Source: Octopus bimaculoides (taxonomy: Eukaryota). Taken from it: a stretch of 54,890 nucleotides of DNA. Positions 933 to 54,852 of the stretch are shown here, piece by piece; the first letter of the stretch is position 1; every line of letters starts with the position of its first letter. A program made the position numbers and the translations under genes. Where the stretch lies: contig NC_068982.1 in NCBI RefSeq assembly GCF_001194135.2, forward strand, positions 148,346,225-148,401,114, given 5' to 3'. The notes beneath the pieces are model-generated. The model saw only the letters and a program-made list of their open reading frames with translations, made no database searches and had not been told where the DNA came from.

Positions 933-1055
933 GTATGTATATAAATATACATTAAAATATACATAAATACACACGCGCGCAAGCACACAAACTTACACAG
1001 AGACACACACATACACATCTGTGTGCATGTATGTATATATATTTATATATGTATT

Positions 1056-1088
<33 letters not shown>

Positions 1089-1521
1089 NNNNNNNNNNNN
1101 NNNNNNNNNNNNNNNNNNNNNNNNNNNNNNNNNNNNNNNNNNNNNNNNNNNNNNNNNNNNNNNNNNNNNNNNNNNNNNNNNNNNNNNNNNNNNNNNNNNN
1201 NNNNNNNNNNNNNNNNNNNNNNNNNNNNNNNNNNNNNNNNNNNNNNNNNNNNNNNNNNNNNNNNNNNNNNNNNNNNNNNNNNNNNNNNNNNNNNNNNNNN
1301 NNNNNNNNNNNNNNNNNNNNNNNNNNNNNNNNNNNNNNNNNNNNNNNNNNNNNNNNNNNNNNNNNNNNNNNNNNNNNNNNNNNNNNNNNNNNNNNNNNNN
1401 NNNNNNNNNNNNNNNNNNNNNNNNNNNNNNNNNNNNNNNNNNNNNNNNNNNNNNNNNNNNNNNNNNNNNNNNNNNNNNNNNNNNNNNNNNNNNNNNNNNN
1501 NNNNNNNNNNNNNNNNNNNNN

Positions 1522-1826
1522 NCACTTTTTACCCCAGCCAAAGATCTACAATGTCTTGCACAGAGTTGGCATCCAAAACCTTTACTGGCAATAGCTGGCT
1601 GTTGTTGTAACTGGGCTCCATGTACCTTTGCGTGTCGTTTAAGTCCTCCTGCTGAATCACACTCCCTTCCACATGCCCGACAGACATGATTAGGATGATG
1701 TGTAGCATCATCACCAGCGGCCTGGTAGTCAATCATCGGTCTTGCTTTATGACTACGAAGATGACTCATGAGTCCAGCTTTACTGAGGCACGGTCTTGCA
1801 CAGAGAGTGCATGTCAGTGTCATAGG
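1522..1826 (-). mobile_element. Triple C2H2 zinc-finger fragment, probably LINE (RTE-like) ORF2 C-terminus
   Basis: CTLCARPCLSKAGLMSHLRSH, CRACGRECDSAGGLKRHAKVH, CQLCARHCRSLAGVKS then N gap; long non-TGEKP linkers; antisense in an SLCO intron between microsatellites. Confidence 0.55.
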
Positions 1827-2218
1827 AATACATACATACATACGTACACACATACATGCACAAACACATATGAGTGGAGATATGTACATATAGCGAGATA
1901 GATAGTTATATCTGTGTGTATATATGTTTGCGTGTGTTTGTATATATTATATTGTTATATGTTCATATCTATGTGCATGCGTAGGTATACGTATATATGA
2001 ATACATCTTCACTAGTAGTACTATTTTCTTAAGCGCATCTACTAAGCAGTATGAACTGTGTTTAAGGCAGATACGCACAGCGTGTATCAATCCGCTATAG
2101 ACACGGTTTGTAAACATGTCAAATAAAGCAAACACGTAGAAACATAGCAATGCCTTCAGTGAGTTGTTTATTATCCCATAAAGAACAAAAGAATACATAA
2201 CATATATATATGTATATG

Positions 2219-5425: not shown

Positions 5426-5468
5426 ATGATTATTATTATTATTATTGTTGTTGTTGTTGTTGTTGTTG

Positions 5469-5506
<38 letters not shown>

Positions 5507-6311
5507 TAGTTTTATTTTTATAACGTGCTTTCACTTCACTACCGAGCGCAGCTCTGTGCGCCTTGGGTATGTGCTGTGGTTTGCTGTGGTGCTCTTATGT
5601 TTACTGTATTGAAAGTGTTTTGCGTAGAATGTGTGCAGTACCCAGTAGTGCAATTTTCTGTATGTTATATATATTTGTAAGTCCTGGTGTTTTTGTTATG
5701 TATTTGTCTGAATATTTTTTTATTANNNNNNNNNNNNNNNNNNNNNNNNNNNNNNNNNNNNNNNNNNNNNNNNNNNNNNNNNNNNNNNNNNNNNNNNNNN
5801 NNNNNNNNNNNNNNNNNNNNNNNNNNNNNNNNNNNNNNNNNNNNNNNNNNNNNNNNNNNNNNNNNNNNNNNNNNNNNNNNNNNNNNNNNNNNNNNNNNNN
5901 NNNNNNNNNNNNNNNNNNNNNNNNNNNNNNNNNNNNNNNNNNNNNNNNNNNNNNNNNNNNNNNNNNNNNNNNNNNNNNNNNNNNNNNNNNNNNNNNNNNN
6001 NNNNNNNNNNNNNNNNNNNNNNNNNNNNNNNNNNNNNNNNNNNNNNNNNNNNNNNNNNNNNNNNNNNNNNNNNNNNNNNNNNNNNNNNNNNNNNNNNNNN
6101 NNNNNNNNNNNNNNNNNNNNNNNNNNNNNNNNNNNNNNNNNNNNNNNNNNNNNNNNNNNNNNNNNNNNNNNNNNNNNNNNNNNNNNNNNNNNNNNNNNNN
6201 NNNNNNNNNNNNNNNNNNNNNNNNNNNNNNNNNNNNNNNNNNNNNNNNNNNNNNNNNNNNNNNNNNNNNNNNNNNNNNNNNNNNNNNNNNNNNTTGTTGT
6301 TGTTGTTGTTG

Positions 6312-6346
<35 letters not shown>

Positions 6347-6349
<3 letters not shown>

Positions 6350-6838
6350 TAGTTTTATTTTTATAACGTGCTTTCACTTCACTACCGAGCGCAGCTCTGT
6401 GCGCCTTGGGTATGTGCTGTGGTTTGCTGTGGTGCTCTTATGTTTACTGTATTGAAAGTGTTTTGCGTAGAATGTGTGCAGTACCCAGTAGTGCAATTTT
6501 CTGTATGTTATATATATTTGTAAGTCCTGGTGTTTTTGTTATGTATTTGTCTGAATATTTTTTTATTACACCTAAGGCACCTACTATGATAGGAAATGAT
6601 AGGAACGTTGTCATCTGCTGGTATTGATGCATCAATTAGAAAGCATTATTTTCTTCATGATCTCTGACAACTATATCTGGCCTATTGGCCTTAATTTCTC
6701 TATCTGTGTGTATTGGCATATCCCAGAGTATGGTTGCTTTCTCGTTTTCTGTGACCTTTTCTGGCGTGTGCCTATACCATCTTTTTTTTTGTTGTTATTC
6801 CATAGTGTTGGCATAGCTTCCAGTGTATGTAGGTCCCA
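6347..6838 (-). mobile_element. 5'-truncated R4/Dong-like LINE (RLE domain) in (TAA)n/(CAA)n
   Basis: Minus strand YIHWKLCQHYG...ILWDMPIHTDREIKANRPDIVVRD...LIDASIP.DDN / PIIVGALG...QKIALLGTAHILRKTL*: PD-(D/E)xK endonuclease C-terminus; trinucleotide arrays on both sides. Confidence 0.8.
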
Positions 6839-8776: not shown

Positions 8777-8852
<76 letters not shown>

Positions 8853-9000
8853 TCGCAAAATACCTTCGGAATGAGAACCCAGGTTCGAAATTTCCCCAAG
8901 ACACCCGATGAAGGCTGAAGGGTTCTTCAGCCGAAACGTTGTGTTGACAACAAACAAGATGAGAACAAATATCCGTCAAATGTAAATAATGTAAATAATG
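8707..9000 (+). mobile_element. tRNA-headed SINE-like element with internal (AAT)n and a hammerhead-containing 3' region (family G)
   Basis: A box tggcgtagtggttaag, B box gagttcgattcc, (AAT)n, body shared with 54612-54740, tail (aaataatgt)n. Confidence 0.7.
8900..8945 (+). ncRNA. Minimal type-I hammerhead ribozyme motif (U4C core variant)
   Basis: gacac-CCGATGA-A-ggctgaag(ggtt)cttcagcc-GAAAC-GTT^-gtgtt: stem I 5 bp, stem II 8 bp perfect, palindromic AACGTT stem III. Confidence 0.7.
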
Positions 9001-9104
9001 CGTTGACCTTTGTATGGAAGTCCTGAATCTATTATGGACCATAACAGAGTCTAGGGAANNNNNNNNNNGAACAAATATCCGTCAAATGTAAATAATGTAA
9101 ATAA

Positions 9105-11986: not shown

Positions 11987-12178
11987 GTAAGTAAAACATA
12001 GCTTTTAGAATTTCCACAGTCTTTTTTTACTCTTTTCTACTTTATAATGTTTTTGTTTTTAATTTCTAATTTCTGATATAATTTTTCGATGAACCGAACC
12101 AACCTACACCGGTTGTCAAGCAGTGGTGAAACAAAAGCACTAAATCACACACGTGCACAAATACATATACACATGTGT

Positions 12179-12526
12179 GTGTTGGCACTCCGTCGCTTAC
12201 GACGTCGAGGGTTCCAGTTGATCCGATCAACGGAACAGCCTGCTCGTGAAATTAACGTGCAAATGGCTGATCACTCTACAGACACGTGTACCCTTAACGT
12301 AGTTCTCGGGGATATTCAGCGTGACACAGTGTGACAAGGCTGACCCTTTGAATTACAGGTACAACAGAAACAAGAAGAAAGTTGTGGTGAAAGAGTGCTG
12401 CCGGTGTCTCGTGGAACTTTAGGTGTTTTCGCTCAATAAACACTTACAACGCCCGGTCTGGGAATCGAAACCGCGATCCTATGACCACGAGTCCGCTGCC
12501 CTAACCACTGGGCCATTACGCCTCCA
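12179..12526 (-). mobile_element. tRNA-derived SINE, family A
   Basis: High identity to 14-396 with internal deletions; intact B box ggtttcgattcc. Confidence 0.85.
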
Positions 12527-14612: not shown

Positions 14613-15908
14613 TTGGGTTGTCCGGAAAGTTCGTGCCGATTTTTAAAGGAACGAAAAAGGTCAATAAATACTTACCATTACATTTTTAATCAACCAAATA
14701 TGAACCATTTTGTTGCACAATGCGTCTCCATCTTTCCTTTAACTTGAAAATACCCTCTTCCCAGAAATGAGGTGGTTTCATGGCAAAGAATTCATCAACG
14801 TATCTTTTTACATCATCCAAGGAATTGAAATCTTTACCACTAAGACTATTTTGCAGAGACCTGAATAAGTGGAAATCCGAAGGAGCAATATCTGGTGAAT
14901 ATGGAGGGTGGAGTAACACGTCCCAGCCGAGCTGCAGCAATTTTTGTCTGGTTCCCAAAGAAACGTGCGGTCTTGCATTATAATGTTGGAAAACAACATC
15001 CTTCTTGTTGGCTAATTATGGACGATTCTCTTGAATTGCTACTTTTAACTCGTCCAGTTGTGTGCAATATTTCTCAGAAGTAATTGTCTGGTTACTTGGG
15101 AGAAGCTCATAGTACAGAATTCCTTTCCAATCCTACCAGACACAAAGCAAGACTTTTTTAGGGTGAAGACCCGCTTTTGGGGTGGCTAAGGGTGGCTAAG
15201 GGTGGCTCATGTCGCTTACTCCAGGATCGCTTTCTCTGAACATTTCGGTAGATAATCAATCTCTCATCACCTGTCACAATTTGCTTTAAAAAAAAGGCGC
15301 GTTTTCATTCCGTTTATAAAGCGAATCACAGATGGAAATGCAATCCAAAAGGTTCTTCTCACTCAACTCATGTGGTACCCAAACATCGTAGCTATTTGTG
15401 TACCCAAGCTTTACCAGGTGCTCATGAACGACGGATTTTGATAGGTTGAAGCTTTCTGCCAATTCTCGGGTTGTGCAACGTGGGTTATTCTCAATTAATG
15501 ACTTGATTTGGTCATCATCTGTAGTGGATGGTCTGCCTGATCACTCTTTATCAATAAGGCTACAATCTCCAGCTCGGAACCTTGCGAACCACTTCTGTAC
15601 AGTTCTTTCGGATAAAGAAACATCACCGTAAACTGCGCATATTTCTTTGGTTGCTTGTGAAGCATTTTTCCCTTTACGGAAAAAGAAAAGCATCAAGTAC
15701 CGAAAATGAACTTTCTTATCTTCCATTTTAAAGGGTTACTGAATTAACACAGGTTCTGGGAACATAAACCTTCTTCCACGAAAAGATAGCTTAAACTGTG
15801 CTCTAAATGGAGGTTTAGTCAAATCCTATTTTATGGACTCAATCATGTTCGATTATAAGTCAAAAGGTAAGCTGCTATAAATCAGCACGAACTTTCCGGA
15901 CAACCCAA
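14613..15908 (-). mobile_element. Full-length mariner transposon (1296 bp), inactive
   Basis: TIRs ttgggttgtccggaaagttcgtgc(c/t)gattt, TA target duplication at 14611-14612 and 15909-15910. Confidence 0.95.
14686..15726 (-). pseudogene. Mariner (DD34D-type) transposase pseudogene
   Basis: MEDKKVHFR...WVPHEL...VTGDE...HYNARPH...HPPYSPDIAPSDFHLF; stops at 15541-15543, 15133-15135, 15016-15018; two frameshifts; second catalytic Asp changed to Tyr. Confidence 0.9.
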
Positions 15909-16772
15909 TACATATTTAAATACATATATGCGCATATTGACATATATATATATACACACTTACAAAAAGATATTTAGGTAAGCATATAGACATAGACACC
16001 TACATATACACTCACATATACTATGTATCCCACTGTTTGAACTATTGTTACTCAAATTAACTAATGAGGGAACCTCTACGTAATCACTTGCATGCAAGAA
16101 ATAGCCGTTAAATTTCATTCAAATTATGCATTACTACTATCATAAAAGAAGGATACGATGGATAGTGTAGTCCTACAAAATATTCTGATGGAATGGTAGA
16201 GATGGAAGGATTTTTAGCATGTTTTTTTTTTTCCATATCAGGTTTAACACTGTGGTAACAACAGCAATAATTCGAGAGCTGCTGCCACGCAGTTACTCTG
16301 CCTCATATATAATCAGCCACCAAACTAATCTCTCTACTTAGTAAAATCTACTATCTTAAAACAGAGAAGAGAAACGCTAAAACTGGGTTTCTCACCGAAG
16401 GTAGCCCTACAAAGATTAAAAACAAAGACAGACAAATTGACCAGGCAGTTCGGCCAGTATTATTTTATATTATTTTATATTATTTTACATTTTAGCACGC
16501 CGGAAAAATTGTCAAACAGCATTTCGTCTGCCTTTTCATTCTGAGCTGAAAAGCCGTCAAGGTCGACTTAACCTTTTTGCTCCTTTTGTGGAGTCGATAA
16601 AATAAGTAACTGCTGAACATTGTTATCGACTTACATTCATCCCTAAAATTACAGGCCTTGTAGCAAAATTTGAAACCATTATATTATATTGTATTGTATT
16701 TTATTATATTGAATTGTGTTATATTGTATAATGTATATCATAGTTTTTAATTTTCTGCTATCTATTCGCCAG

Positions 16773-17047
16773 GTTGGATGGCTGGGCCCGTTTTCTTCGG
16801 ACTGATTATAGATACTACATGTTTGATCTGGTCGTCTTCTGATGGAAGCGGCAGAGGATCTTGTGTTCTATATGACACCGACAAAATGAGGAAGGCAATA
16901 TTTCTAACCGAAGGTGGACTTACATGCCTGGCTTCATTTTTTTGTATGATAGCTTTAATTTGTCATATAAGATCGCAAAAGCAGACAATGAAAGAAGAAA
17001 TAGTAAATGAAAATTTAAAAGTGGAAATTGAAGCACCTCAACTGTAA
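16773..17047 (+). CDS. SLCO: SLCO/OATP terminal coding exon (275 bp, TM11-TM12, C-tail)
   Basis: cgccag acceptor; GWMAGPVFFGLIIDTTCLIW...GSCVLYD...EIEAPQL*, with OATP GP-x-x-FG-x-x-ID-x-x-C-x-x-W motif; the six exons sum to 1004 nt and stay in frame to TAA 17045-17047. Confidence 0.95.
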
Positions 17048-17468
17048 TTCCCTTTGGATAATCCGTTCTAATATATCCTAATTCATAAAGCAACTATTAT
17101 TAGATCGATTACCTGTGTGTGTGTGCCTACGTGTGTGTGTGCGTGCATGCTTGTATGTATGTGTGCATGTACATCGATGACGTATATGAGAATACATACA
17201 TTTAAAATAATGAAATATATTTTATAATGTGCGGAAGAAGTCTGAAGTTTTGTGGTGAATTAATCACCAGAGAGAAAATACGCTGATGAAGGATATTGTC
17301 TGAAACGTTGGACTTTCCTTCTTCGCCGTCGCATAAAATCTGTTCCATTCTTTTAACTATTTGTATCTGCTATTTGCTAAGGCAAACCCACACCAATTTC
17401 CACACTTTTTACCATTTTACAGTATTTGAGTTATATATTTCCCCCTATTTAACTCTTTCATATCGCCT

Positions 17469-17509
17469 CTGCTGAAGGGATATTCCCTCATATCCTTGAA
17501 ACAGCTGTA
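17469..17509 (+). ncRNA. Hammerhead motif (family F), A6C, stem I lost
   Basis: CTGCTGA-agggata(ttccctca)tatcctt-GAAAC-agct-GTA; 256 nt upstream of the homologous core at 17725. Confidence 0.5.
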
Positions 17510-17719
17510 ACACAACCTTCCTCTAACTCTACTATTTCCCTCTATTTAACTTTCTACAACAGAATTTTCCTTGAATAATAGAACTGCAGCTGTAACATCC
17601 AACATATATTTTTAAATTTTTATTCTCTTATTTCCCTTTATACTTACTCTATCTCTCCCTTTCCAAAATAATTTCGTATATGGAACCTTACTATTTCTCT
17701 CTATTAAACTTTCTCATAC

Positions 17720-17769
17720 GGTCCCTGATGAAGGGATATCCCACATATCCTTGAAACAGCTGTAAGACT
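17720..17769 (+). ncRNA. Type-I hammerhead ribozyme motif, canonical core (family F)
   Basis: ggtcc-CTGATGA-agggata(tcccaca)tatcctt-GAAAC-agct-GTA^-agact; stem III is the palindrome ACAGCTGT; innermost stem-I pair is C.A. Confidence 0.7.
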
Positions 17770-18417
17770 ACCTTTCTCTTTATAAATGTCCTAGAAATTT
17801 CACACTACCTTGGTTTTGTTGTCTCATTTTATTTAACACNNNNNNNNNNNNNNNNNNNNNNNNNNNNNNNNNNNNNNNNNNNNNNNNNNNNNNNNNNNNN
17901 NNNNNNNNNNNNNNNNNNNNNNNNNNNNNNNNNNNNNNNNNNNNNNNNNNNNNNNNNNNNNNNNNNNNNNNNNNNNNNNNNNNNNNNNNNNNNNNNNNNN
18001 NNNNNNNNNNNNNNNNNNNNNNNNNNNNNNNNNNNNNNNNNNNNNNNNNNNNNNNNNNNNNNNNNNNNNNNNNNNNNNNNNNNNNNNNNNNNNNNNNNNN
18101 NNNNNNNNNNNNNNNNNNNNNNNNNNNNNNNNNNNNNNNNNNNNNNNNNNNNNNNNNNNNNNNNNNNNNNNNNNNNNNNNNNNNNNNNNNNNNNNNNNNN
18201 NNNNNNNNNNNNNNNNNNNNNNNNNNNNNNNNNNNNNNNNNNNNNNNNNNNNNNNNNNNNNNNNNNNNNNNNNNNNNNNNNNNNNNNNNNNNNNNNNNNN
18301 NNNNNNNNNNNNNNNNNNNNNNNNNNNNNNNNNNNNNNNNNNNNNNNNNNNNNNNNNNNNNNNNNNNNNNNNNNNNNNNNNNNNNNNNNNNNNNNNNNNN
18401 NNNNNNNNNNNNNNNNN

Positions 18418-18605: not shown

Positions 18606-18986
18606 TATTGCACAAATATAATCTTTTTACACCCAAATAAAGTGCAATTCATATTCGAGGCTCCGATAAAAGTTATGGATATTATTCAGGCACTCAATTA
18701 TGAGTGCGCTGTCAACTTATAGCAGAAACAGCAGTAAGCTACTGAACTTCATAACATAACCGTTATTTTTCCTGTGTCATCTTTTTTTCATATATATTTA
18801 TATATATGCATGGATACATGCGTGCGTATGTGCTGTATGTTGTGTGTGTTTGTGTGTGTGTGTGTGTGGTGTATACATACATACATACATACGTACATAC
18901 ATACATACATACATACATGCATACATACATACATACATACATACCTATTTCTATATCAGTGGGGTTGTGCTTGCATGTATGTATGT

Positions 18987-40400: not shown

Positions 40401-41989
40401 ATACACATAATGCATGCTGAATAAAAGCCTTGTGTTTCCTGTGACAAATAAACACATGGAGTTTCATGTTCCTATCTTTTCATTTACTTTAGTTACAAGC
40501 TTTGAAATATCTCAATACAATCTCAATTTAGTGGAAGCTCAATCCTTTATGTACACATTATGTATGAAAATTAAAGTAGGATGATTATGGTTGAAACATT
40601 CGTGGTTATAAATCAGAGCTAAGAGGCGGATAAACAATAAAAGCACCAGCTAAATAGCAAAAAATAATAACCACAAATATTAGTACTTGTCTGCAGAATT
40701 ATCAACAACAACATTCAAAACATCATCAAATATCTACTTAGTTACAATTATAGTCACTAATCACTCGTCATCAGTCATGCATATCTCTACATCAACCAGT
40801 GTGATGTATCTTATATCTTGCATCTACTTGACGTGCTAGAAATAGCAGCCAAATTTCCTTCATATCAGCCTACCATCTTTAAACAAGCAAAAACATTCCT
40901 TAATGTAATCCTGGATACACTATACTTACAAAAAAAAACAAAAAAAAACAGGATGGTCATGGATGGAGTACTTTTGATCATAGGGCTCCTAAATCAGCTT
41001 TGACTTAAGGCTAAATGACTTCATTGCTACTACACTGCCACCATAACCAGATATTTATTTAATCTCATGTTACAATTGGTAAACAGTTGTGTGGTTGGTT
41101 ATAGTCATCCAGGTGTTATAGGAGCCTACATGTAAGAGTGTCATTTGCTAGCATTGCTTTCAAATAAAGATACTTTATGAGGGTTTTTTTTCCATTAAGT
41201 TACACAATCCTCTGTCACTCTATCAGAAATGTAATTAACCTGTTTTTGACTCACTGGAAACCTTTAACTCCATGGACACACACAGACACACACACATGGA
41301 CACAACAAACACACTCACACACAACAAACATACACTCACACACGTACATACATACAGATTAGTCTCAGACACATTATACAACAACATAATACAACATCGA
41401 CAATGAAATGTATACACAAATGCACTCTCAACAGTGCCAAATGCTTTAATAGCACACAAACATACTTACACACACACACACACACACACACATGCATGCA
41501 CTTCTGCACATTCACTTTGTTGTTGTCTCCTCTGCTGCTGTGAAATATATGAAACATCTTTCCTTCCTCCCNNNNNNNNNNNNNNNNNNNNNNNNNNNNN
41601 NNNNNNNNNNNNNNNNNNNNNNNNNNNNNNNNNNNNNNNNNNNNNNNNNNNNNNNNNNNNNNNNNNNNNNNNNNNNNNNNNNNNNNNNNNNNNNNNNNNN
41701 NNNNNNNNNNNNNNNNNNNNNNNNNNNNNNNNNNNNNNNNNNNNNNNNNNNNNNNNNNNNNNNNNNNNNNNNNNNNNNNNNNNNNNNNNNNNNNNNNNNN
41801 NNNNNNNNNNNNNNNNNNNNNNNNNNNNNNNNNNNNNNNNNNNNNNNNNNNNNNNNNNNNNNNNNNNNNNNNNNNNNNNNNNNNNNNNTATATATATTGA
41901 GAAAATGGAGGCAGTCAGAATTTTGGATAATTCTTTATTAGCACTTTCATTCAGTTTTTGAACTCATCAAGACAAAATCAAAATCAAAG

Positions 41990-42305
41990 CAGACTCTTGT
42001 TCAAAGTAAATGCAGATATGAACTGTAAGATGCAGAATCTCATATACTGCATTACTTGCCCCAACTGCAAAGAAAATTACATTGGTGAAACAAACAATTC
42101 CCTATGCCAATGTGCAAGAATCCACAGACAACACATCAGACAAGAGGAATTGAGCAAGATTCCACTGAGCAAGCATCTAGAAATATGCAGTGAAGGAAAG
42201 TTCAAAATCTTCCCTTTTAACAAATGTTCAAGAGATGACTCAAAATTCTGAAAAGCAATGGAGCTGCACTTCCTCAAAAAATTCTCTCCAAAATTAAATG
42301 TTTGA
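41990..42305 (+). mobile_element. Penelope-like GIY-YIG endonuclease fragment
   Basis: NCKMQNLIYCITCPNCKENYIGET...RIHRQHIR...KHLE...F*KAMELHFLKKFSPKLNV*; one internal TGA; upstream part in the N gap. Confidence 0.85.
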
Positions 42306-42976
42306 AATAGAAGCAAAGGAATTACATTATTATTATTTTTTTAAAAATAGTAATGATGATGGATGTAGAGAAAACATTTATATTACACTATTATTGTTGT
42401 TTCTGAATGTGGCGCCACTGTTAATAAAGTGATACTCATCTCTATAAGTGATCAAATATATATATATATATATAACATTGGGATTTTGACAACTCTTGTT
42501 CTCATACAACTTACATATACCTGAGCAAGAATACTAGAACCATTTTATCACTGATTAGGAACAATATCTAATGTAGCTACTTGGCAAATTTGTGTAAAAG
42601 ATCTCTTTTGAATTGACTTATTTAAGCAAGCAAGAAAAAGAAAAAGAAATCCTACAAAAGGATGAAAGATACTCAAAAAAATATATTTAAGCAGGCCCTG
42701 CTTTACTATAAAATTGATATCCTACTGAGTGGCTTCCAGCTAAATATACAATATACACACAAATGAAATCAAAGAGCAAGTGACTGAACATTCCACAGAC
42801 AAGTGTACCCTTAACTTAGGAGCAGATAGACAGCGGACAACTGATGAAGGGTTGTTCTTTGTGTTGCTTGTCTTGTTTTCCTTTTGTTTGTCTCGTTGTT
42901 TGCGTATTGAACTCATTTGTTTTCGTATTTCATGTTGTTTACTGTTGGTAACATCCTATACCCATATATACATGTG

Positions 42977-43013
<37 letters not shown>

Positions 43014-43026
43014 GCATGTATGTATG

Positions 43027-43070
<44 letters not shown>

Positions 43071-49923: not shown

Positions 49924-52900
49924 TGATGATGATGATGATCACAACGATGACAACAACAACAGCAACAACATCACTAATACAATACAGCTTAATGGCTTCC
50001 TTGTTGACTAGTTCATAGTTATTAACAGCAAAAGAAGGTGATTTTTGACTGAGATATGAAACCGTGCTGTCACACTGTTACTACAGATTTGATGATGTTT
50101 GCTATCTAATTCAAGTGATTGTTATGGAATATTCATTAAGATGATTCCTTTATATGTCATTGTCAAATAAGTCAATGTAAAACATATAATGAAGTAAATT
50201 CCACTAATTACCTTCTATCGGGTTACAAAGATTCTATTTCAGCAAAAGCCATTATAATAACCAAGTGTTGACAATTTTGATTACTACAGAAATATGCTGT
50301 TAGCTCATTAGCACTGAGTACTTAGTAAAACTAGACAAAGCCTGGTGTGAGATGAAAAGTATATTCCATTAAAAAATTATTCTACTGTTTTCTAATTTTA
50401 TTTTGCTTCTTTATTTTCTTTCTTTCTTGTTAAGGTTGGTTGAGAAGTCATGAGTTTGATCTCTGAGCTGTGTGACACATTGTATTTTTGAACAAGGCAC
50501 TTAGTTTAACACTGTTCTAGTCTACCTGGCTGAAAATGAATACAAGCTGAATCATGATGTCACTTTCTTTCCTGCCATCTGTTACATTCTTGGTGATCCA
50601 CAGGGTCAATAGTAGTAGAATCAAAACATTTTTGCCTGCTTGCAAGCTCTGGTTTGAGTGCTGTATTCAAAATATTCTGATTTTCTACCCTTTCAGGAAT
50701 TGGAAATAATTTACCTTTGATATTTAATAATTATTACACACAGGTTTTATCTGCATTGACATGCATGTACATATGTATGTATGTATGTATGTATATATGT
50801 ATGTATGTATTATATATGTATGTATGTATGTATGCATGCATGTATGTATGTATATATGTATGTATGTATGTATGTATGTGTATATACATATATACCTTTG
50901 TTATGAGACATGTGAAAAAGTTGAACAGCGAATGACCAAAAGATTTAAGAAATAGAAGTATTTGAAGGTCAATGCAAATATGAATTGCTAAACAAAAAAT
51001 CTCATTAGCTACACCACATGACAACAATGCAATGAAAATTATATCAGCCATATATGATCAAAATTAACACATTGGGTTAGAGTACATAAACAACAAGTCA
51101 AAGATTCATCTCTTAGAAATGTTCCATGCAGTGAATATCTAGATGTTTATGCAAATAGAAAATTTAAAAACAACTTCCTCTATATTGATGAATTCATAAC
51201 GTGTGTTTGAAAAGCTGTAAAAAGAAAAAGCTCTTACACCCAATGTGAAAACTTCTTTCTAAAAGATTTGTGTCATTCTGCTTTTTTTAAAAATTTTATA
51301 TAATCAATAATTTCTAATTCATGTAAATCTTTCAAACACACAGACATTATATAGATATATATGCATATATACACACCACACGCAGACACAAAAACAGATA
51401 CACATGTGTGGTTCAGAAGTTCACTTTCCAACCACATAGCTATGAGATCAGACACACTGCAGCACTTGGCCAAGTGGCTTCTATTCTAACCCAGGGTTAA
51501 TTAAAAGGAGTATATTTGTGAGACAAAAACTAAAAGAAACTTTTGTATATATATATATATATATATATATCATCTTCATCATCATTTAATATCCGTTTTC
51601 TATGCTGGAATATATATGTATGTATATATATATGTGTGTGAGTGTGTGTATATGTATGTATGTATGTATATATATAAATATATATATACACACACACACA
51701 CACACACGTGTGTTTGTGTGTGCGTGTGTTACTTATTTTGATTGTGATTAAGCACTGAAAAATTTGAATTGCAATATAAATTATCACAAATAATTTTTAT
51801 TAACTTATGGCGATAATTATTTCTGAGAAACCCATGACACTAAATTAAACTTGAGTACCAGAGATGACAGAGTATCAACTAATATTTATTAAGTCAATAA
51901 TCAATCCATTTCGATTGTATTCTGGTGTTGTATCCAAGAAATGGAAGCAATTCCATTTAGAGTGCTTAACTTAAAACCAAAATACTTGTTCCTTTTATCT
52001 TGATTATAAAATCTTACTTCAGTGTTTTCAATTAAGGAGAAAATGTCAACTGTAAAATAAATGATATTACAATGAACTTCTATTGATGTTCTTCTATATT
52101 ATGACCATCTCAATCATTGCTGTCCACTTAGTTTCTTCTCAGTCTTGGGCAGAAGTGGGAAGGGGATCTTTTTATAAATGAAAAATACAGTGAATTGTGC
52201 ACAGTCTAAGGCACAATGAATTAAGTGTAATTCAATAAGGTTGCATTAAAGAAAATGTTATTGAACATACAGTGAAATGTAATTATATATATTATGAAAA
52301 TCTAATTATAAATATCAAAATAATAAACTTGACCTTTTAAAAAATGATCAACAGATTTTCTCTGAAAGTTTCAGTAAAATAGAAAACTATTAGAATAGTG
52401 AAATTTATTGCAAAATTCTGTAATTGTGTATAAGATGTAGCTACAACTTTTCTAAACTTCTGTGGCTCCACTTAGAACATCTGCCATTTTTAGTAAAGAA
52501 AAGGCTTATATTGCAACAGATATGTCATGATTTTTTTAAAATTTGCCTAACATTTTGTTCAATGATTTACTTTATAAGAAAAAAATTGATATGAAGATAT
52601 TCTTTAATTACCAACATTACAAACGACTTATGTTTTAAAGCAAATTCTAAAATTTGCCTAAATTTTTTAAATAAGTGTTCTATGAAAATCTTTGTGTAAT
52701 TCTTTATGCAATGTAGTTGTCATTACAGAGGCTATTTAAGGTGGAAAGCTGGACAGAATTGTTAAAACATTGGGGAAATTTTTGCAGTATCTGTCCTGGT
52801 TCTTTGAGTTGGAATTCTGCCAAGATCATCTTTGTCTTTCATCCCTCTGGGATTGATTAAATAAAATACCAGTACAAAACTGGTATTTTATTATAAATAT

Positions 52901-54570: not shown

Positions 54571-54664
54571 ACTGCTCTCTCACTCAATAATGATAATAAT
54601 AATAATGAAAACAGCATCGAAAAATACCTTAGGAATGAGAACCCAAGTTCGAAATTTCCCCCAA

Positions 54665-54710
54665 GACACCTGATGAAGGCTGGAGGGTATATCAGCTGAA
54701 ACGTTGTGTT
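54665..54710 (+). ncRNA. Minimal type-I hammerhead ribozyme motif, canonical core
   Basis: gacac-CTGATGA-A-ggctg(10 nt)cagct-GAAAC-GTT^-gtgtt; same family as 8900-8945. Confidence 0.75.
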
Positions 54711-54852
54711 AACAACAAACAAGATGAGGACAAATATCCATCAATTGTAAATAAGGTAAATCTAATATCTCTTATCCTTCACTCACCCCAGGTTGCTGGG
54801 TGTGTCTCAGCAAGTGACTGTAACAAACATGCAGATTAAAAGTAAAAATAAC

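What the first reader, a model, noticed from the sequence alone, without database searches (positions are those of the whole stretch)
17283..17769. Tandem sense-strand hammerheads just downstream of the SLCO stop codon (retrozyme-like array)
Seen: three cores on the gene's strand, at 17283 (CTGATGA-A-gga..tct-GAAACGTT, stem I lost), 17469 and 17725. The last two are homologous, 256 nt apart, with 7-bp stem II and the self-complementary ACAGCUGU stem III; a third cagctgtaac remnant lies at about 17587. I found no AATAAA or ATTAAA between the stop and 17703. Established: metazoan non-LTR retrozymes are tandem units of a few hundred nt, each with a type-I hammerhead, and can yield circular RNAs; palindromic stem III allows two adjacent copies to form an active dimer. 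Inference: these may lie in the SLCO 3' UTR, where cleavage would remove the poly(A) tail or release a ~256-nt monomer. Both family-F copies have stem-I defects, so activity may be low.
Basis: partly seen in the sequence, partly recalled or inferred. Interest (0 to 1): 0.72.

Follow-up and report, generated by a model that had tools for sequence, protein, structure and literature searches.

The report
Decayed hammerhead repeats behind SLCO gene
Just past the end of an organic-anion-transporter gene lie worn-out copies of two families of small mobile repeats that carry hammerhead-ribozyme motifs, a kind of element already known to be common in invertebrate genomes; only one copy keeps an intact catalytic core, and nothing found here suggests it still works.

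Summary
The motifs are real and not chance. A full minimal-hammerhead descriptor hits 17725-17764 (and 54670-54705 elsewhere) and no position in 300 dinucleotide shuffles. Several details differ from the finding. (1) The 17469 copy has CTGCTGA, not CTGATGA (A6 to C), and no helix I. (2) The 17283 motif belongs to a second family, G (copies at 8822-8996 and 54586-54761), not to the 17469/17725 family. (3) The two F copies share only 89 nt. The repeat period is about 96-97 nt across four head-to-tail units, two of which have lost the ribozyme, so there is no 256-nt monomer. (4) No Rfam hammerhead model matches, even at E<=10 on an 81-nt slice. The architecture is a long helix II, a 4-bp helix I and a 2-bp helix III with a palindromic loop. 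That is the 'minimal' hammerhead described for Penelope-like retroelements, which cleaves poorly even when intact. Monomer and dimer folds both disfavour an active shape. Whether the array lies in the SLCO 3' UTR could not be tested. The canonical poly(A) hexamers are indeed absent, but variant hexamers and a GU-rich tract lie upstream. Best reading: inert retroelement debris. Low interest.

The parts
16773..17047 (+). Last coding exon of the SLCO/OATP gene. The stop codon TAA is at 17045-17047. The exon start is inferred from the AG at 16771-16772.
   Evidence: ORF 16751-17047. Pfam PF03137 OATP E=4.8e-11, profile positions 508-545 of 545. Acceptor context read.
17185..17310 (+). Decayed copy (G3) of family G, a min-hammerhead element. 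The motif is at 17283-17309: CTGATGA-A-GGAT/ATT/GTCT-GAAA-CGTT. Helix II is 4 bp with two G.U pairs, and there is no helix I.
   Evidence: Local alignment to 54586-54761 scores 52, reached by 0.4% of shuffles. It passes only the relaxed descriptor. Its MFE fold is not a hammerhead.
17428..17524 (+). Family-F unit U1. The hammerhead-like segment is 17469-17509, with mutated core CTGCTGA (17469-17475), helix II at 17476-17483/17490-17497, and GAAACAGCTGTA at 17498-17509. There is no helix I.
   Evidence: helix I count 1.
17525..17620 (+). Family-F unit U2. The ribozyme core and helix II are lost. The 5' 31 nt of the unit and GCAGCTGTAAC (17586-17596) are retained.
   Evidence: Alignment score 58 against a null maximum of 47. 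Multiple alignment A3.
17621..17683 (+). Family-F unit U3, a truncated 63-nt unit without a ribozyme. The evidence is weak on its own.
   Evidence: Repeat family D4, spacing 96 and 63. Alignment A3. The pairwise score of 28 is not significant by itself.
17684..17787 (+). Family-F unit U4, with the only intact core of the array. Core CTGATGA is at 17725-17731. Helix II is 17732-17739/17745-17752 with loop CCCAC. GAAA is at 17753-17756. Helix III is C17757-G17762 and A17756-U17763 around loop AGCU. The predicted cleavage site is after A17764. Helix I is 17720-17723/17766-17769 (4 bp, with a 1.1-2.1 A/C mismatch). ATTAAA lies at 17703-17708.
   Evidence: Full descriptor hit with 0 of 300 shuffles. 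Coordinates. Folds. ATTAAA.
17840..18417 (.). Assembly gap (578 N) 52 nt after the array. Homology to the F unit already ends at about 17787, and no F homology resumes after the gap.

Best explanation
The 0.6 kb behind the SLCO stop codon holds the remains of two insertions of hammerhead-bearing retroelements, both in the gene's orientation.

- The first is a degraded family-G element at about 17185-17310.
- The second is a short head-to-tail array of four family-F units at 17428-17787, with a period of about 96-97 nt.

Both families carry the 'minimal' type-I hammerhead described for Penelope-like elements and their non-autonomous derivatives. Its features are a long helix II, a short open helix I, and almost no helix III apart from a palindrome (ACAGCUGU in F, ACGU in G) that lets two copies pair.

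In the active element such ribozymes are thought to cut multimeric transcripts into units for retrotransposition. That step is taken from the literature, not shown here.

At this locus the machinery has decayed:
- U1 has A6 changed to C and no helix I.
- U2 and U3 have lost the ribozyme.
- G3 has a collapsed helix II and no helix I.
- Only U4 keeps all core nucleotides. It has a weak 4-bp helix I, no G10.1-C11.1 pair, and no matching partner for a productive dimer.

The most likely present-day function is none: neutral repeat debris in a 3' UTR or in downstream intergenic DNA. Shown here: the sequence anatomy, the family relations, non-randomness and the unfavourable folds. Inferred: the retroelement origin, the loss of activity and the absence of a host role.
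For: - **Non-chance motif.** The full descriptor hits only 17725 and 54670, with 0 of 300 dinucleotide shuffles. CTGATGA-N8-38-GAAAC occurs 3 times against 0.25 expected.
- **Repeat structure.** U1 and U4 are 83% identical over 89 nt. U2 scores 58 against a null maximum of 47. Spacings are 97, 96 and 63 nt, and a four-unit alignment was obtained.
- **Second family.** 54586-54761 and 8822-8996 are 88.6% identical, and 17185-17310 aligns to them.
- **Architecture.** It matches the PLE min-HHR description: helix II of 7-8 bp, helix I of 4-5 bp, palindromic 15.2-16.2/loop 3, massive dispersed copies and low activity (PMC4209133).
- **Decay.** CTGCTGA at 17469 and CCGATGA at 8905. Helix I counts are 1 for U1 and 4 for U4.
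- **Folding.** The U4 hammerhead fold is -6.9 kcal/mol against an MFE of -12.7, and the MFE pairs the core with the helix III strand. Cofolding forms the ACAGCUGU duplex but sequesters CUGAUGA. Fold z-scores are -1.2 to -1.6.
- **Cross-dimer helix I**, read directly from the sequence. The U4 5' strand with the U1 3' strand gives 2 bp. The U1 5' strand with the U4 3' strand gives 2 contiguous bp next to a dead core.
- **Penelope-like elements are present in the window.** A GIY-YIG remnant lies at 41931-42303.
- **No counterpart in the closest available relative.** Nothing similar lies downstream of the closest available SLCO-like gene, in Argonauta hians.
Against: - U4 keeps every invariant core nucleotide and a cleavable GUA site.
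- Between U1 and U4 the hammerhead segment is better conserved (3 of 43 differences) than the flanks (12 of 47; Fisher p=0.024). This could reflect constraint, though it is equally expected from selection in the source element.
- Only two F copies were available, with no covariation. The genome-wide copy number and any link of F or G to a Penelope-like pLTR could not be tested.
- No PLE ORF adjoins the array. The one related PLE 3' end retrieved (L002) has no hammerhead.
- A unit of about 96 nt is shorter than described retrozymes, so the origin of the tandem arrangement is uncertain.
- No transcript data were available.
Confidence: 0.75

Rival explanations
1. Working 3' UTR ribozyme. The array is transcribed as part of the SLCO mRNA, and U4 cleaves after A17764, possibly using the palindromes of U1 or U2 to stabilise helix III. 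This removes the poly(A) tail and lowers SLCO expression, as proposed for the Clec2 3' UTR hammerhead of mammals.
For: It is on the sense strand, 0.68 kb after the stop codon. There is no AATAAA or ATTAAA before 17703. The U4 core is intact and passes the full descriptor. In the 381-nt fold, the U2 remnant's GCAGCUGU pairs with U4's ACAGCUGU. A precedent exists for a 3' UTR hammerhead (PMC6155905).
Against: The hammerhead fold is 5.8 kcal/mol worse than the MFE, which pairs the core away. Helix I is 4 bp with a 1.1-2.1 mismatch, and there is no G10.1-C11.1 pair. In a double hammerhead, helix I must form between the two copies, and here the U4/U1 pairing gives only 2 bp (read from the sequence). 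Intact min-HHRs already cleave poorly in vitro (PMC4209133). Variant hexamers and a GU-rich tract upstream allow an earlier 3' end. Nothing similar lies behind the Argonauta SLCO-like gene. In vertebrates, retrozymes are depleted from genic regions, which suggests active copies there are selected against (preprint 10.64898/2026.07.22.740005).
Confidence: 0.07
2. Live retrozyme array. The F units are an active non-LTR retrozyme locus whose transcripts are cut into monomers and circularised.
For: Head-to-tail units, low GC (33.6%), a type-I topology and a palindromic helix III, as in described retrozymes (PMC7229834).
Against: Release of a unit needs two active ribozymes, and only one core is intact. 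Units are 83% or less identical, and two have lost the ribozyme. The unit of about 96 nt is below the reported 150-450 nt. There is no canonical type-I ribozyme and no Rfam hit. The array has only 4 units and ends at 17787.
Confidence: 0.04
3. Same debris, different origin of the tandem arrangement. A single inserted hammerhead-bearing fragment was expanded locally by slippage or unequal crossing-over (a TE-derived minisatellite), rather than by reverse transcription of a multimeric or circular RNA.
For: The unit is very short (96-97 nt). The best-conserved part in all four units is the pyrimidine-rich 5' 31 nt rather than the ribozyme. One unit is truncated at 63 nt. The window is rich in micro- and minisatellites.
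Against: Partial tandems are also typical of Penelope-like insertions (PMC8557442). With one locus the two origins cannot be told apart.
Confidence: 0.3
4. Chance resemblance to a hammerhead in AT-rich sequence.
For: No Rfam hammerhead model matches. Fold z-scores are unremarkable. The 17283 motif alone is within chance expectation.
Against: No shuffle in 300 gives a full-descriptor hit, whereas the window has two. The motif recurs in homologous repeat copies of two families.
Confidence: 0.02

Closest known systems
Minimal hammerheads (min-HHRs) of metazoan Penelope-like elements (Cervera & de la Pena 2014, PMC4209133)
   Same: Type-I topology, helix II of 6-8 bp, helix I of 4-5 bp without a defined loop 1, and helix III reduced to a palindrome (ACGU in family G, ACAGCUGU in family F). 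Copies are dispersed, mostly solitary or truncated, and poor catalysis is expected. [quoted passage not shown]
   Different: Family F lacks the G10.1-C11.1 pair (A-U, then G.U). No Penelope-like ORF or pLTR flanks the array. Only two F copies were seen, with no covariation. The units form a 96-nt tandem.
Metazoan non-LTR retrozymes (Cervera & de la Pena 2020, PMC7229834; Li et al. 2026 preprint)
   Same: Head-to-tail repeats, low GC, a type-I hammerhead per unit, and a palindromic helix III that allows dimers. They are proposed to be non-autonomous derivatives of Penelope-like elements.
   Different: The unit is about 96 nt rather than 150-450 nt. The ribozyme is not canonical: no loop-loop contacts and no Rfam match. 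Only 1 of 4 units has an intact core. RNA or circle evidence could not be obtained.
Discontinuous hammerhead in the 3' UTR of mammalian Clec2 genes (reviewed in PMC6155905)
   Different: The Clec2 ribozyme is a type-III motif conserved across mammalian species and has demonstrated cleavage. Here the motif is a repeat-derived type-I minimal motif, UTR membership is unverified, and no conservation was found in the one relative available.
Newt satellite 2, Schistosoma Sm-alpha and Rfam Hammerhead_1 (RF00163)
   Same: Type-I hammerheads in tandem or SINE-like repeats of animals. The short helix III needs dimers.
   Different: Those carry canonical helices I (6 bp) and II (4 bp) with interacting loops. 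The motifs here are not detected by any Rfam hammerhead model at E<=10.

Membership tests
Hammerhead ribozyme (general) | Invariant core: C3 U4 G5 A6 N7 G8 A9, G12 A13 A14, A15.1-U16.1, H17 | tested here: met
   Met for U4 (17725-17764) and for the 17283 and 54670 motifs. Not met for U1 (CTGCTGA, A6 to C) or the 8905 copy (CCGATGA, U4 to C).
Hammerhead ribozyme (general) | Three helices around the core that form the three-way junction | tested here: inconclusive
   For U4, helix II is 8 bp, helix III is 2 bp plus a tetraloop, and helix I is 4 bp after a 1.1-2.1 mismatch. That fold is -6.9 kcal/mol against an MFE of -12.7. U1 and the 17283 motif have no helix I.
Hammerhead ribozyme (general) | Match to a curated hammerhead covariance model (Rfam RF00163, RF00008, RF02275-7) | tested here: not met
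   No hammerhead hit at gathering score or at E<=10 on the whole window, 621 nt, 81 nt or 76 nt.
Hammerhead ribozyme (general) | Site-specific self-cleavage | not testable with these tools
   Needs in vitro transcription or RNA end mapping.
PLE-type minimal hammerhead (PMC4209133) | Long helix II (6-8 bp) and short helix I (4-5 bp) without a defined loop 1 | tested here: met
   U4 has 8 bp and 4 bp. The 54670 copy has 6 bp and 5 bp, and the 8905 copy has 8 bp and 5 bp.
PLE-type minimal hammerhead (PMC4209133) | Palindromic 15.2-16.2 and loop 3 | tested here: met
   ACAGCTGT at 17501 and 17756. GAAACGTT (palindrome ACGT) at 17302, 8933 and 54698.
PLE-type minimal hammerhead (PMC4209133) | [quoted passage not shown] | tested here: not met
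   In family F, the A after CUGAUGA pairs with the U before GAAA, followed by G.U. No register gives G10.1-C11.1. Family G meets both features in the 8905 copy, and has G.U in the 54670 copy.
PLE-type minimal hammerhead (PMC4209133) | Location in a Penelope-like pLTR, or membership of a multi-copy consensus family with covariation | tested here: inconclusive
   No PLE ORF lies next to the array. A GIY-YIG remnant lies 24 kb away. The two F copies have identical helices. The genome was not available, and pattern scans of three collections found nothing.
Metazoan non-LTR retrozyme (PMC7229834) | Head-to-tail tandem repeats of low GC content | tested here: met
   Four units with a 96-97-nt period. 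GC is 33.6%.
Metazoan non-LTR retrozyme (PMC7229834) | Monomer of about 150-450 bp | tested here: not met
   The period is 96-97 nt. The 256-nt spacing is not a unit, because only 89 nt are shared and the flanks after U1 and U4 are unrelated.
Metazoan non-LTR retrozyme (PMC7229834) | A canonical type-I hammerhead (helix I-II tertiary contacts) in each unit | tested here: not met
   One intact core in four units. The architecture is min-HHR and there is no Rfam match.
Metazoan non-LTR retrozyme (PMC7229834) | Expression as unit-length linear and circular RNA | not testable with these tools
   No transcript data could be reached. Exact-protein look-ups for this species found nothing.
3' UTR regulatory hammerhead (Clec2 type) | Lies inside the mature mRNA 3' UTR | not testable with these tools
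   Only hexamer scans were possible. There is no AATAAA or ATTAAA before 17703, but variants occur at 17070, 17084, 17191 and 17214, plus a TG-rich tract at 17114-17168.
3' UTR regulatory hammerhead (Clec2 type) | Conserved at the orthologous position in related species | tested here: inconclusive
   The Argonauta hians SLCO-like locus L001 shows no F or G homology in the 10 kb after its stop codon. However, protein identity is only 40-41% and orthology is unproven.

The most novel reading that the evidence does not exclude
U4 is a weak but real ribozyme inside the SLCO 3' UTR. It is helped in cis by the palindromes of the dead neighbouring units (U1, U2), which extend helix III. It trims a fraction of SLCO transcripts, making it an invertebrate, repeat-derived counterpart of the Clec2 3' UTR hammerhead, in which decayed copies serve as structural partners.
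Probability: 0.04. Interest if true: 0.6.

Novelty: new member of a known kind. Interest (0 to 1): 0.18.

Why it matters
If the reading is right, this is ordinary. Minimal hammerheads from Penelope-like elements and their derivatives number in the thousands in many invertebrate genomes, and decayed copies near genes are expected. The modest value lies in three points. First, two previously unnamed min-hammerhead families are documented in what appears to be a cephalopod genome; the papers searched here gave only an Rfam hit count for giant squid (PMC6962438). Second, Rfam models miss this class entirely. Third, the case gives a worked example of why a dimeric hammerhead made of diverged copies cannot assemble helix I. 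It would matter only if U4 proved to cleave SLCO mRNA.

Tried and rejected
- **Rfam searches.** Five runs were made: gathering score, then E<=10 on the whole window, 621 nt, 81 nt and 76 nt. None gave a hammerhead hit. The top hits (mir-297, mir-466 and similar) are microsatellite artefacts.
- **Comparative test.** The SLCO last exon found only one homologue, in Argonauta hians (41% identity). Its locus L001 has no F or G homology downstream.
- **Wasted search.** A second protein search with four concatenated exons returned nothing, because I set the E-value cut-off at 1e-10, which was too strict.
- **More DNA from the same species.** An exact look-up of the mariner-like ORF found nothing on record.
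- **Exact-pattern scans for the F hammerhead** in metagenome, prokaryotic-genome and viral collections gave 0 hits, as expected for an animal repeat.
- **Link to Penelope-like elements.** The GIY-YIG remnant found three relatives. The 80%-identical one (L002, 828 nt) has no CTGANGA motif. P0004 was not on record.
- **45841 and 42841.** The CTGATGAAGGG strings there were considered as extra F copies. This was rejected: no GAAA or helix follows, and they belong to another repeat.
- **17283 as an F copy with an internal deletion.** Rejected in favour of family G.
- **U3-A8 core variants.** None were found.
- **tRNA scan.** None were found.

Full report
**Setting.** The window is a gap-ridden draft scaffold (17 N runs) of about 31% GC, rich in TG/TA/ATAC microsatellites. 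It is animal DNA. It carries exons of an SLCO/OATP transporter on the + strand. The last exon (about 16773-17047) matches Pfam OATP to the final profile position (E=4.8e-11) and ends with TAA at 17045-17047. The only database homologue of that exon is a protein of the octopod Argonauta hians (41% identity). The source is therefore probably a cephalopod; this is an inference and the species is not identified.

**The observation.**
- CTGATGA-N-GAAAC occurs three times in the window against 0.25 expected.
- I wrote a descriptor for a type-I hammerhead with these elements: core CUGANGA, an optional extra base, helix II of at least 5 bp, GAAA, a 15.2-16.2 pair with a loop of 0-8 nt, U16.1, H17, and helix I of at least 4 bp. 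It hits only 17725-17764 and 54670-54705, both on the + strand, and nothing in 300 dinucleotide-preserving shuffles. So 17725 is not a chance motif.
- The 17469 copy is its homologue (17436-17524 vs 17692-17779, 83% identity), 256 nt upstream. It has the same 8-bp helix II (AGGGAUAU/AUAUCCUU) and the same GAAACAGCUGUA.
- The GCAGCTGTAAC remnant is at 17586-17596.
- No AATAAA or ATTAAA lies between the stop codon and 17703.

**Corrections to the observation.**
1. The 17469 'core' reads CTGCTGA. Invariant A6 is a C, and helix I is absent (1 bp).
2. The 17283 motif passes only a descriptor without helix I, which chance supplies 0.12 times per window. Its alignment to family F is not significant (35 against a null 95th percentile of 40). 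The stretch 17185-17310 does align to another repeat, family G (score 52, reached by 0.4% of shuffles).
3. Family G has two good copies, 54586-54761 and 8822-8996, which are 88.6% identical. The 8822-8996 copy lies in the sense strand between SLCO exons. Both begin next to (AAT)n.
4. The G ribozyme is CUGAUGA-A-GGCUGA...UCAGCC-GAAA-CGU-U with a 5-bp helix I. The 8905 copy has CCGAUGA.
5. The F repeat unit is not 256 nt. Beyond the 89 shared nucleotides, the sequences after U1 and after U4 are unrelated.
6. Instead there are four head-to-tail units: U1 17428-17524, U2 17525-17620 (score 58 against a null maximum of 47), U3 17621-17683 (truncated and weak on its own), and U4 17684-17787. Spacings are 97, 96 and 63 nt. 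U2 and U3 have lost the ribozyme. Their best-kept part is the pyrimidine-rich first 31 nt.

**What kind of hammerhead.** No Rfam hammerhead model reports either F2 or the better-formed G1, even at E<=10 on slices of 81 and 76 nt. This agrees with the architecture. A long helix II, a 4-5-bp open helix I and a helix III reduced to a palindrome together make the 'min-HHR' that Cervera and de la Pena defined in the pseudo-LTRs of Penelope-like elements. They found it by the thousand, mostly as solitary truncated copies, in invertebrate genomes (PMC4209133).
- Family G fits that description fully, including the extra base after A9 and G10.1-C11.1 in the 8905 copy.
- Family F fits except for the 10.1-11.1 pair, which is A-U followed by G.U.
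- The same paper reports no cleavage by single min-HHRs, and only low activity in dimeric or trimeric constructs.
The F array meets the tandem and low-GC criteria (33.6% GC) but not the unit size or the canonical ribozyme.
- A Penelope-like endonuclease remnant is present in the window (41931-42303; weak Pfam GIY-YIG hit, E=0.012, below the curated cut-off; an in-frame stop at 42249). An 80%-identical relative sits on a metagenome contig. I could not connect it to family F or G.

**Can it work?**
- As a monomer, U4's hammerhead fold is -6.9 kcal/mol against an MFE of -12.7 kcal/mol, in which CUG of the core pairs with CAG of helix III. The z-score of the fold is -1.2.
- In the dimeric ('double hammerhead') arrangement drawn in PMC4209133 Fig. 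1A, the two palindromes form one extended helix III. By my reading of that topology (an inference), helix I of each junction must then form between the 5' strand of one copy and the 3' strand of the other.
- Read from the sequence, the U4 5' strand with the U1 3' strand gives 2 bp. The reverse combination gives 2 contiguous bp next to U1's mutated core.
- Cofolding does predict the 8-bp ACAGCUGU duplex, but with the CUGAUGA strand paired elsewhere.
- In the 381-nt fold, the U2 remnant pairs with U4's palindrome.
- So one nominally intact core remains, with no good way to assemble. By contrast, G1 (54670) has a hammerhead-compatible fold within 0.6 kcal/mol of its MFE.

**Is it in the 3' UTR?** This could not be tested. 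No transcript or same-species sequence could be reached. The absence of canonical hexamers is confirmed. However, variant hexamers lie upstream of 17283: AATATA at 17070 and 17214, CATAAA at 17084, AATACA at 17191. CATAAA 17084 is followed 25-30 nt later by a TG-rich tract (17114-17168), which is a plausible poly(A) site layout (an inference). The Argonauta SLCO-like locus shows nothing similar in the 10 kb behind its stop codon. With about 40% protein identity, its orthology is unproven.

**A point in favour of constraint.** Between U1 and U4 the ribozyme segment differs at 3 of 43 positions and the flanks at 12 of 47 (Fisher p=0.024). Two of the three differences are in loop 2 and one destroys the core. 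This pattern is what selection on the ribozyme in the source element would leave. It does not require a host function.

**Verdict.** The stretch behind the SLCO stop codon is retroelement debris. It holds a degraded family-G min-hammerhead element, followed by a decayed four-unit array of family-F min-hammerhead repeats. Only one of the array's four units keeps an intact core, and it is structurally handicapped. The finding is real as a motif, imprecise in its details, and ordinary in kind. The regulatory or circular-RNA readings remain possible only at low probability.

Noticed in passing
window 54586-54761 and 8822-8996 (+): A second min-hammerhead repeat family (G), with two copies 88.6% identical, both starting next to (AAT)n microsatellites. 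The 54670-54705 ribozyme is the best formed in the window: intact core, 6-bp helix II, 5-bp helix I, and a fold within 0.6 kcal/mol of the MFE. The 8905 copy lies in the sense strand between SLCO exons and has core CCGATGA. A 32-nt piece of the element is repeated at 9071-9102 after a 10-N gap.
   Followed up: partly
window 41931-42303 (+): Remnant of a Penelope-like element endonuclease: a GIY-YIG motif with a CCHH-type linker, an in-frame TGA at 42249, and an ORF tail ending ...KKFSPKLNV. It starts at the edge of gap 41572-41888. An 80%-identical copy lies on an 828-nt ENA metagenome contig (L002). No hammerhead motif was found in its 3' flank.
   Followed up: partly
window 8905, 17283, 17469, 17725, 42841, 45841, 54670: All seven matches to CTGATGAAGG (at most 1 mismatch) are on the + strand, the SLCO sense strand. 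Five are hammerhead-related. The matches at 42841 and 45841 share AGATAGA...GACA-CTGATGAAGGG but have no GAAA or helices, and they belong to another repeat. With about four independent insertions the strand bias is not significant.
   Followed up: partly
window ~100-390 and ~12170-12500 (element on the - strand); partial copy 42764-42819: A tRNA-derived SINE. The reverse complement of ...GGTCTGGGAATCGAAACCGCGATCC...CCACTGGGCCATT is a tRNA-like head. The two long copies are highly similar. ARAGORN calls no tRNA.
   Followed up: partly
window 14686-15726 (-): Mariner/Tc1-like transposase remnants (…HPPYSPDIAPSDFHLFRSLQNSL…) in the intron upstream of the last SLCO exon. The exact ORF is not on record in the public protein collection.
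   Followed up: partly
window 5445-5725 vs 6294-6530: The same sequence (identical ORF translations) appears on both sides of the 568-N gap at 5726-6293. This is likely an assembly redundancy around a trinucleotide repeat.
   Followed up: no
window 993-1889 (-), across gap 1089-1522: An ORF with repeated C2H2-like zinc-finger motifs (C..C...H...H, e.g. CTLCARPCLSKAGLMSHLRSH). It is possibly part of a transposable element or a ZNF pseudogene inside the SLCO locus.
   Followed up: no
window-wide, e.g. 43000-43070, 18866-18934, 51628-51713: Sub-threshold Rfam matches to mir-297, mir-466, mir-3149 and others all fall on (TG)n, (TA)n or (ATAC)n microsatellites and are composition artefacts.
   Followed up: yes
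L001 20845-20874 (+) (Argonauta hians): An isolated CTGAAGA-G-GTTGCA...TGCAAT-GAAA motif (6-bp helix II) lies 9 kb downstream of the SLCO-like gene. No convincing helix III or helix I was seen, so it is probably chance.
   Followed up: no
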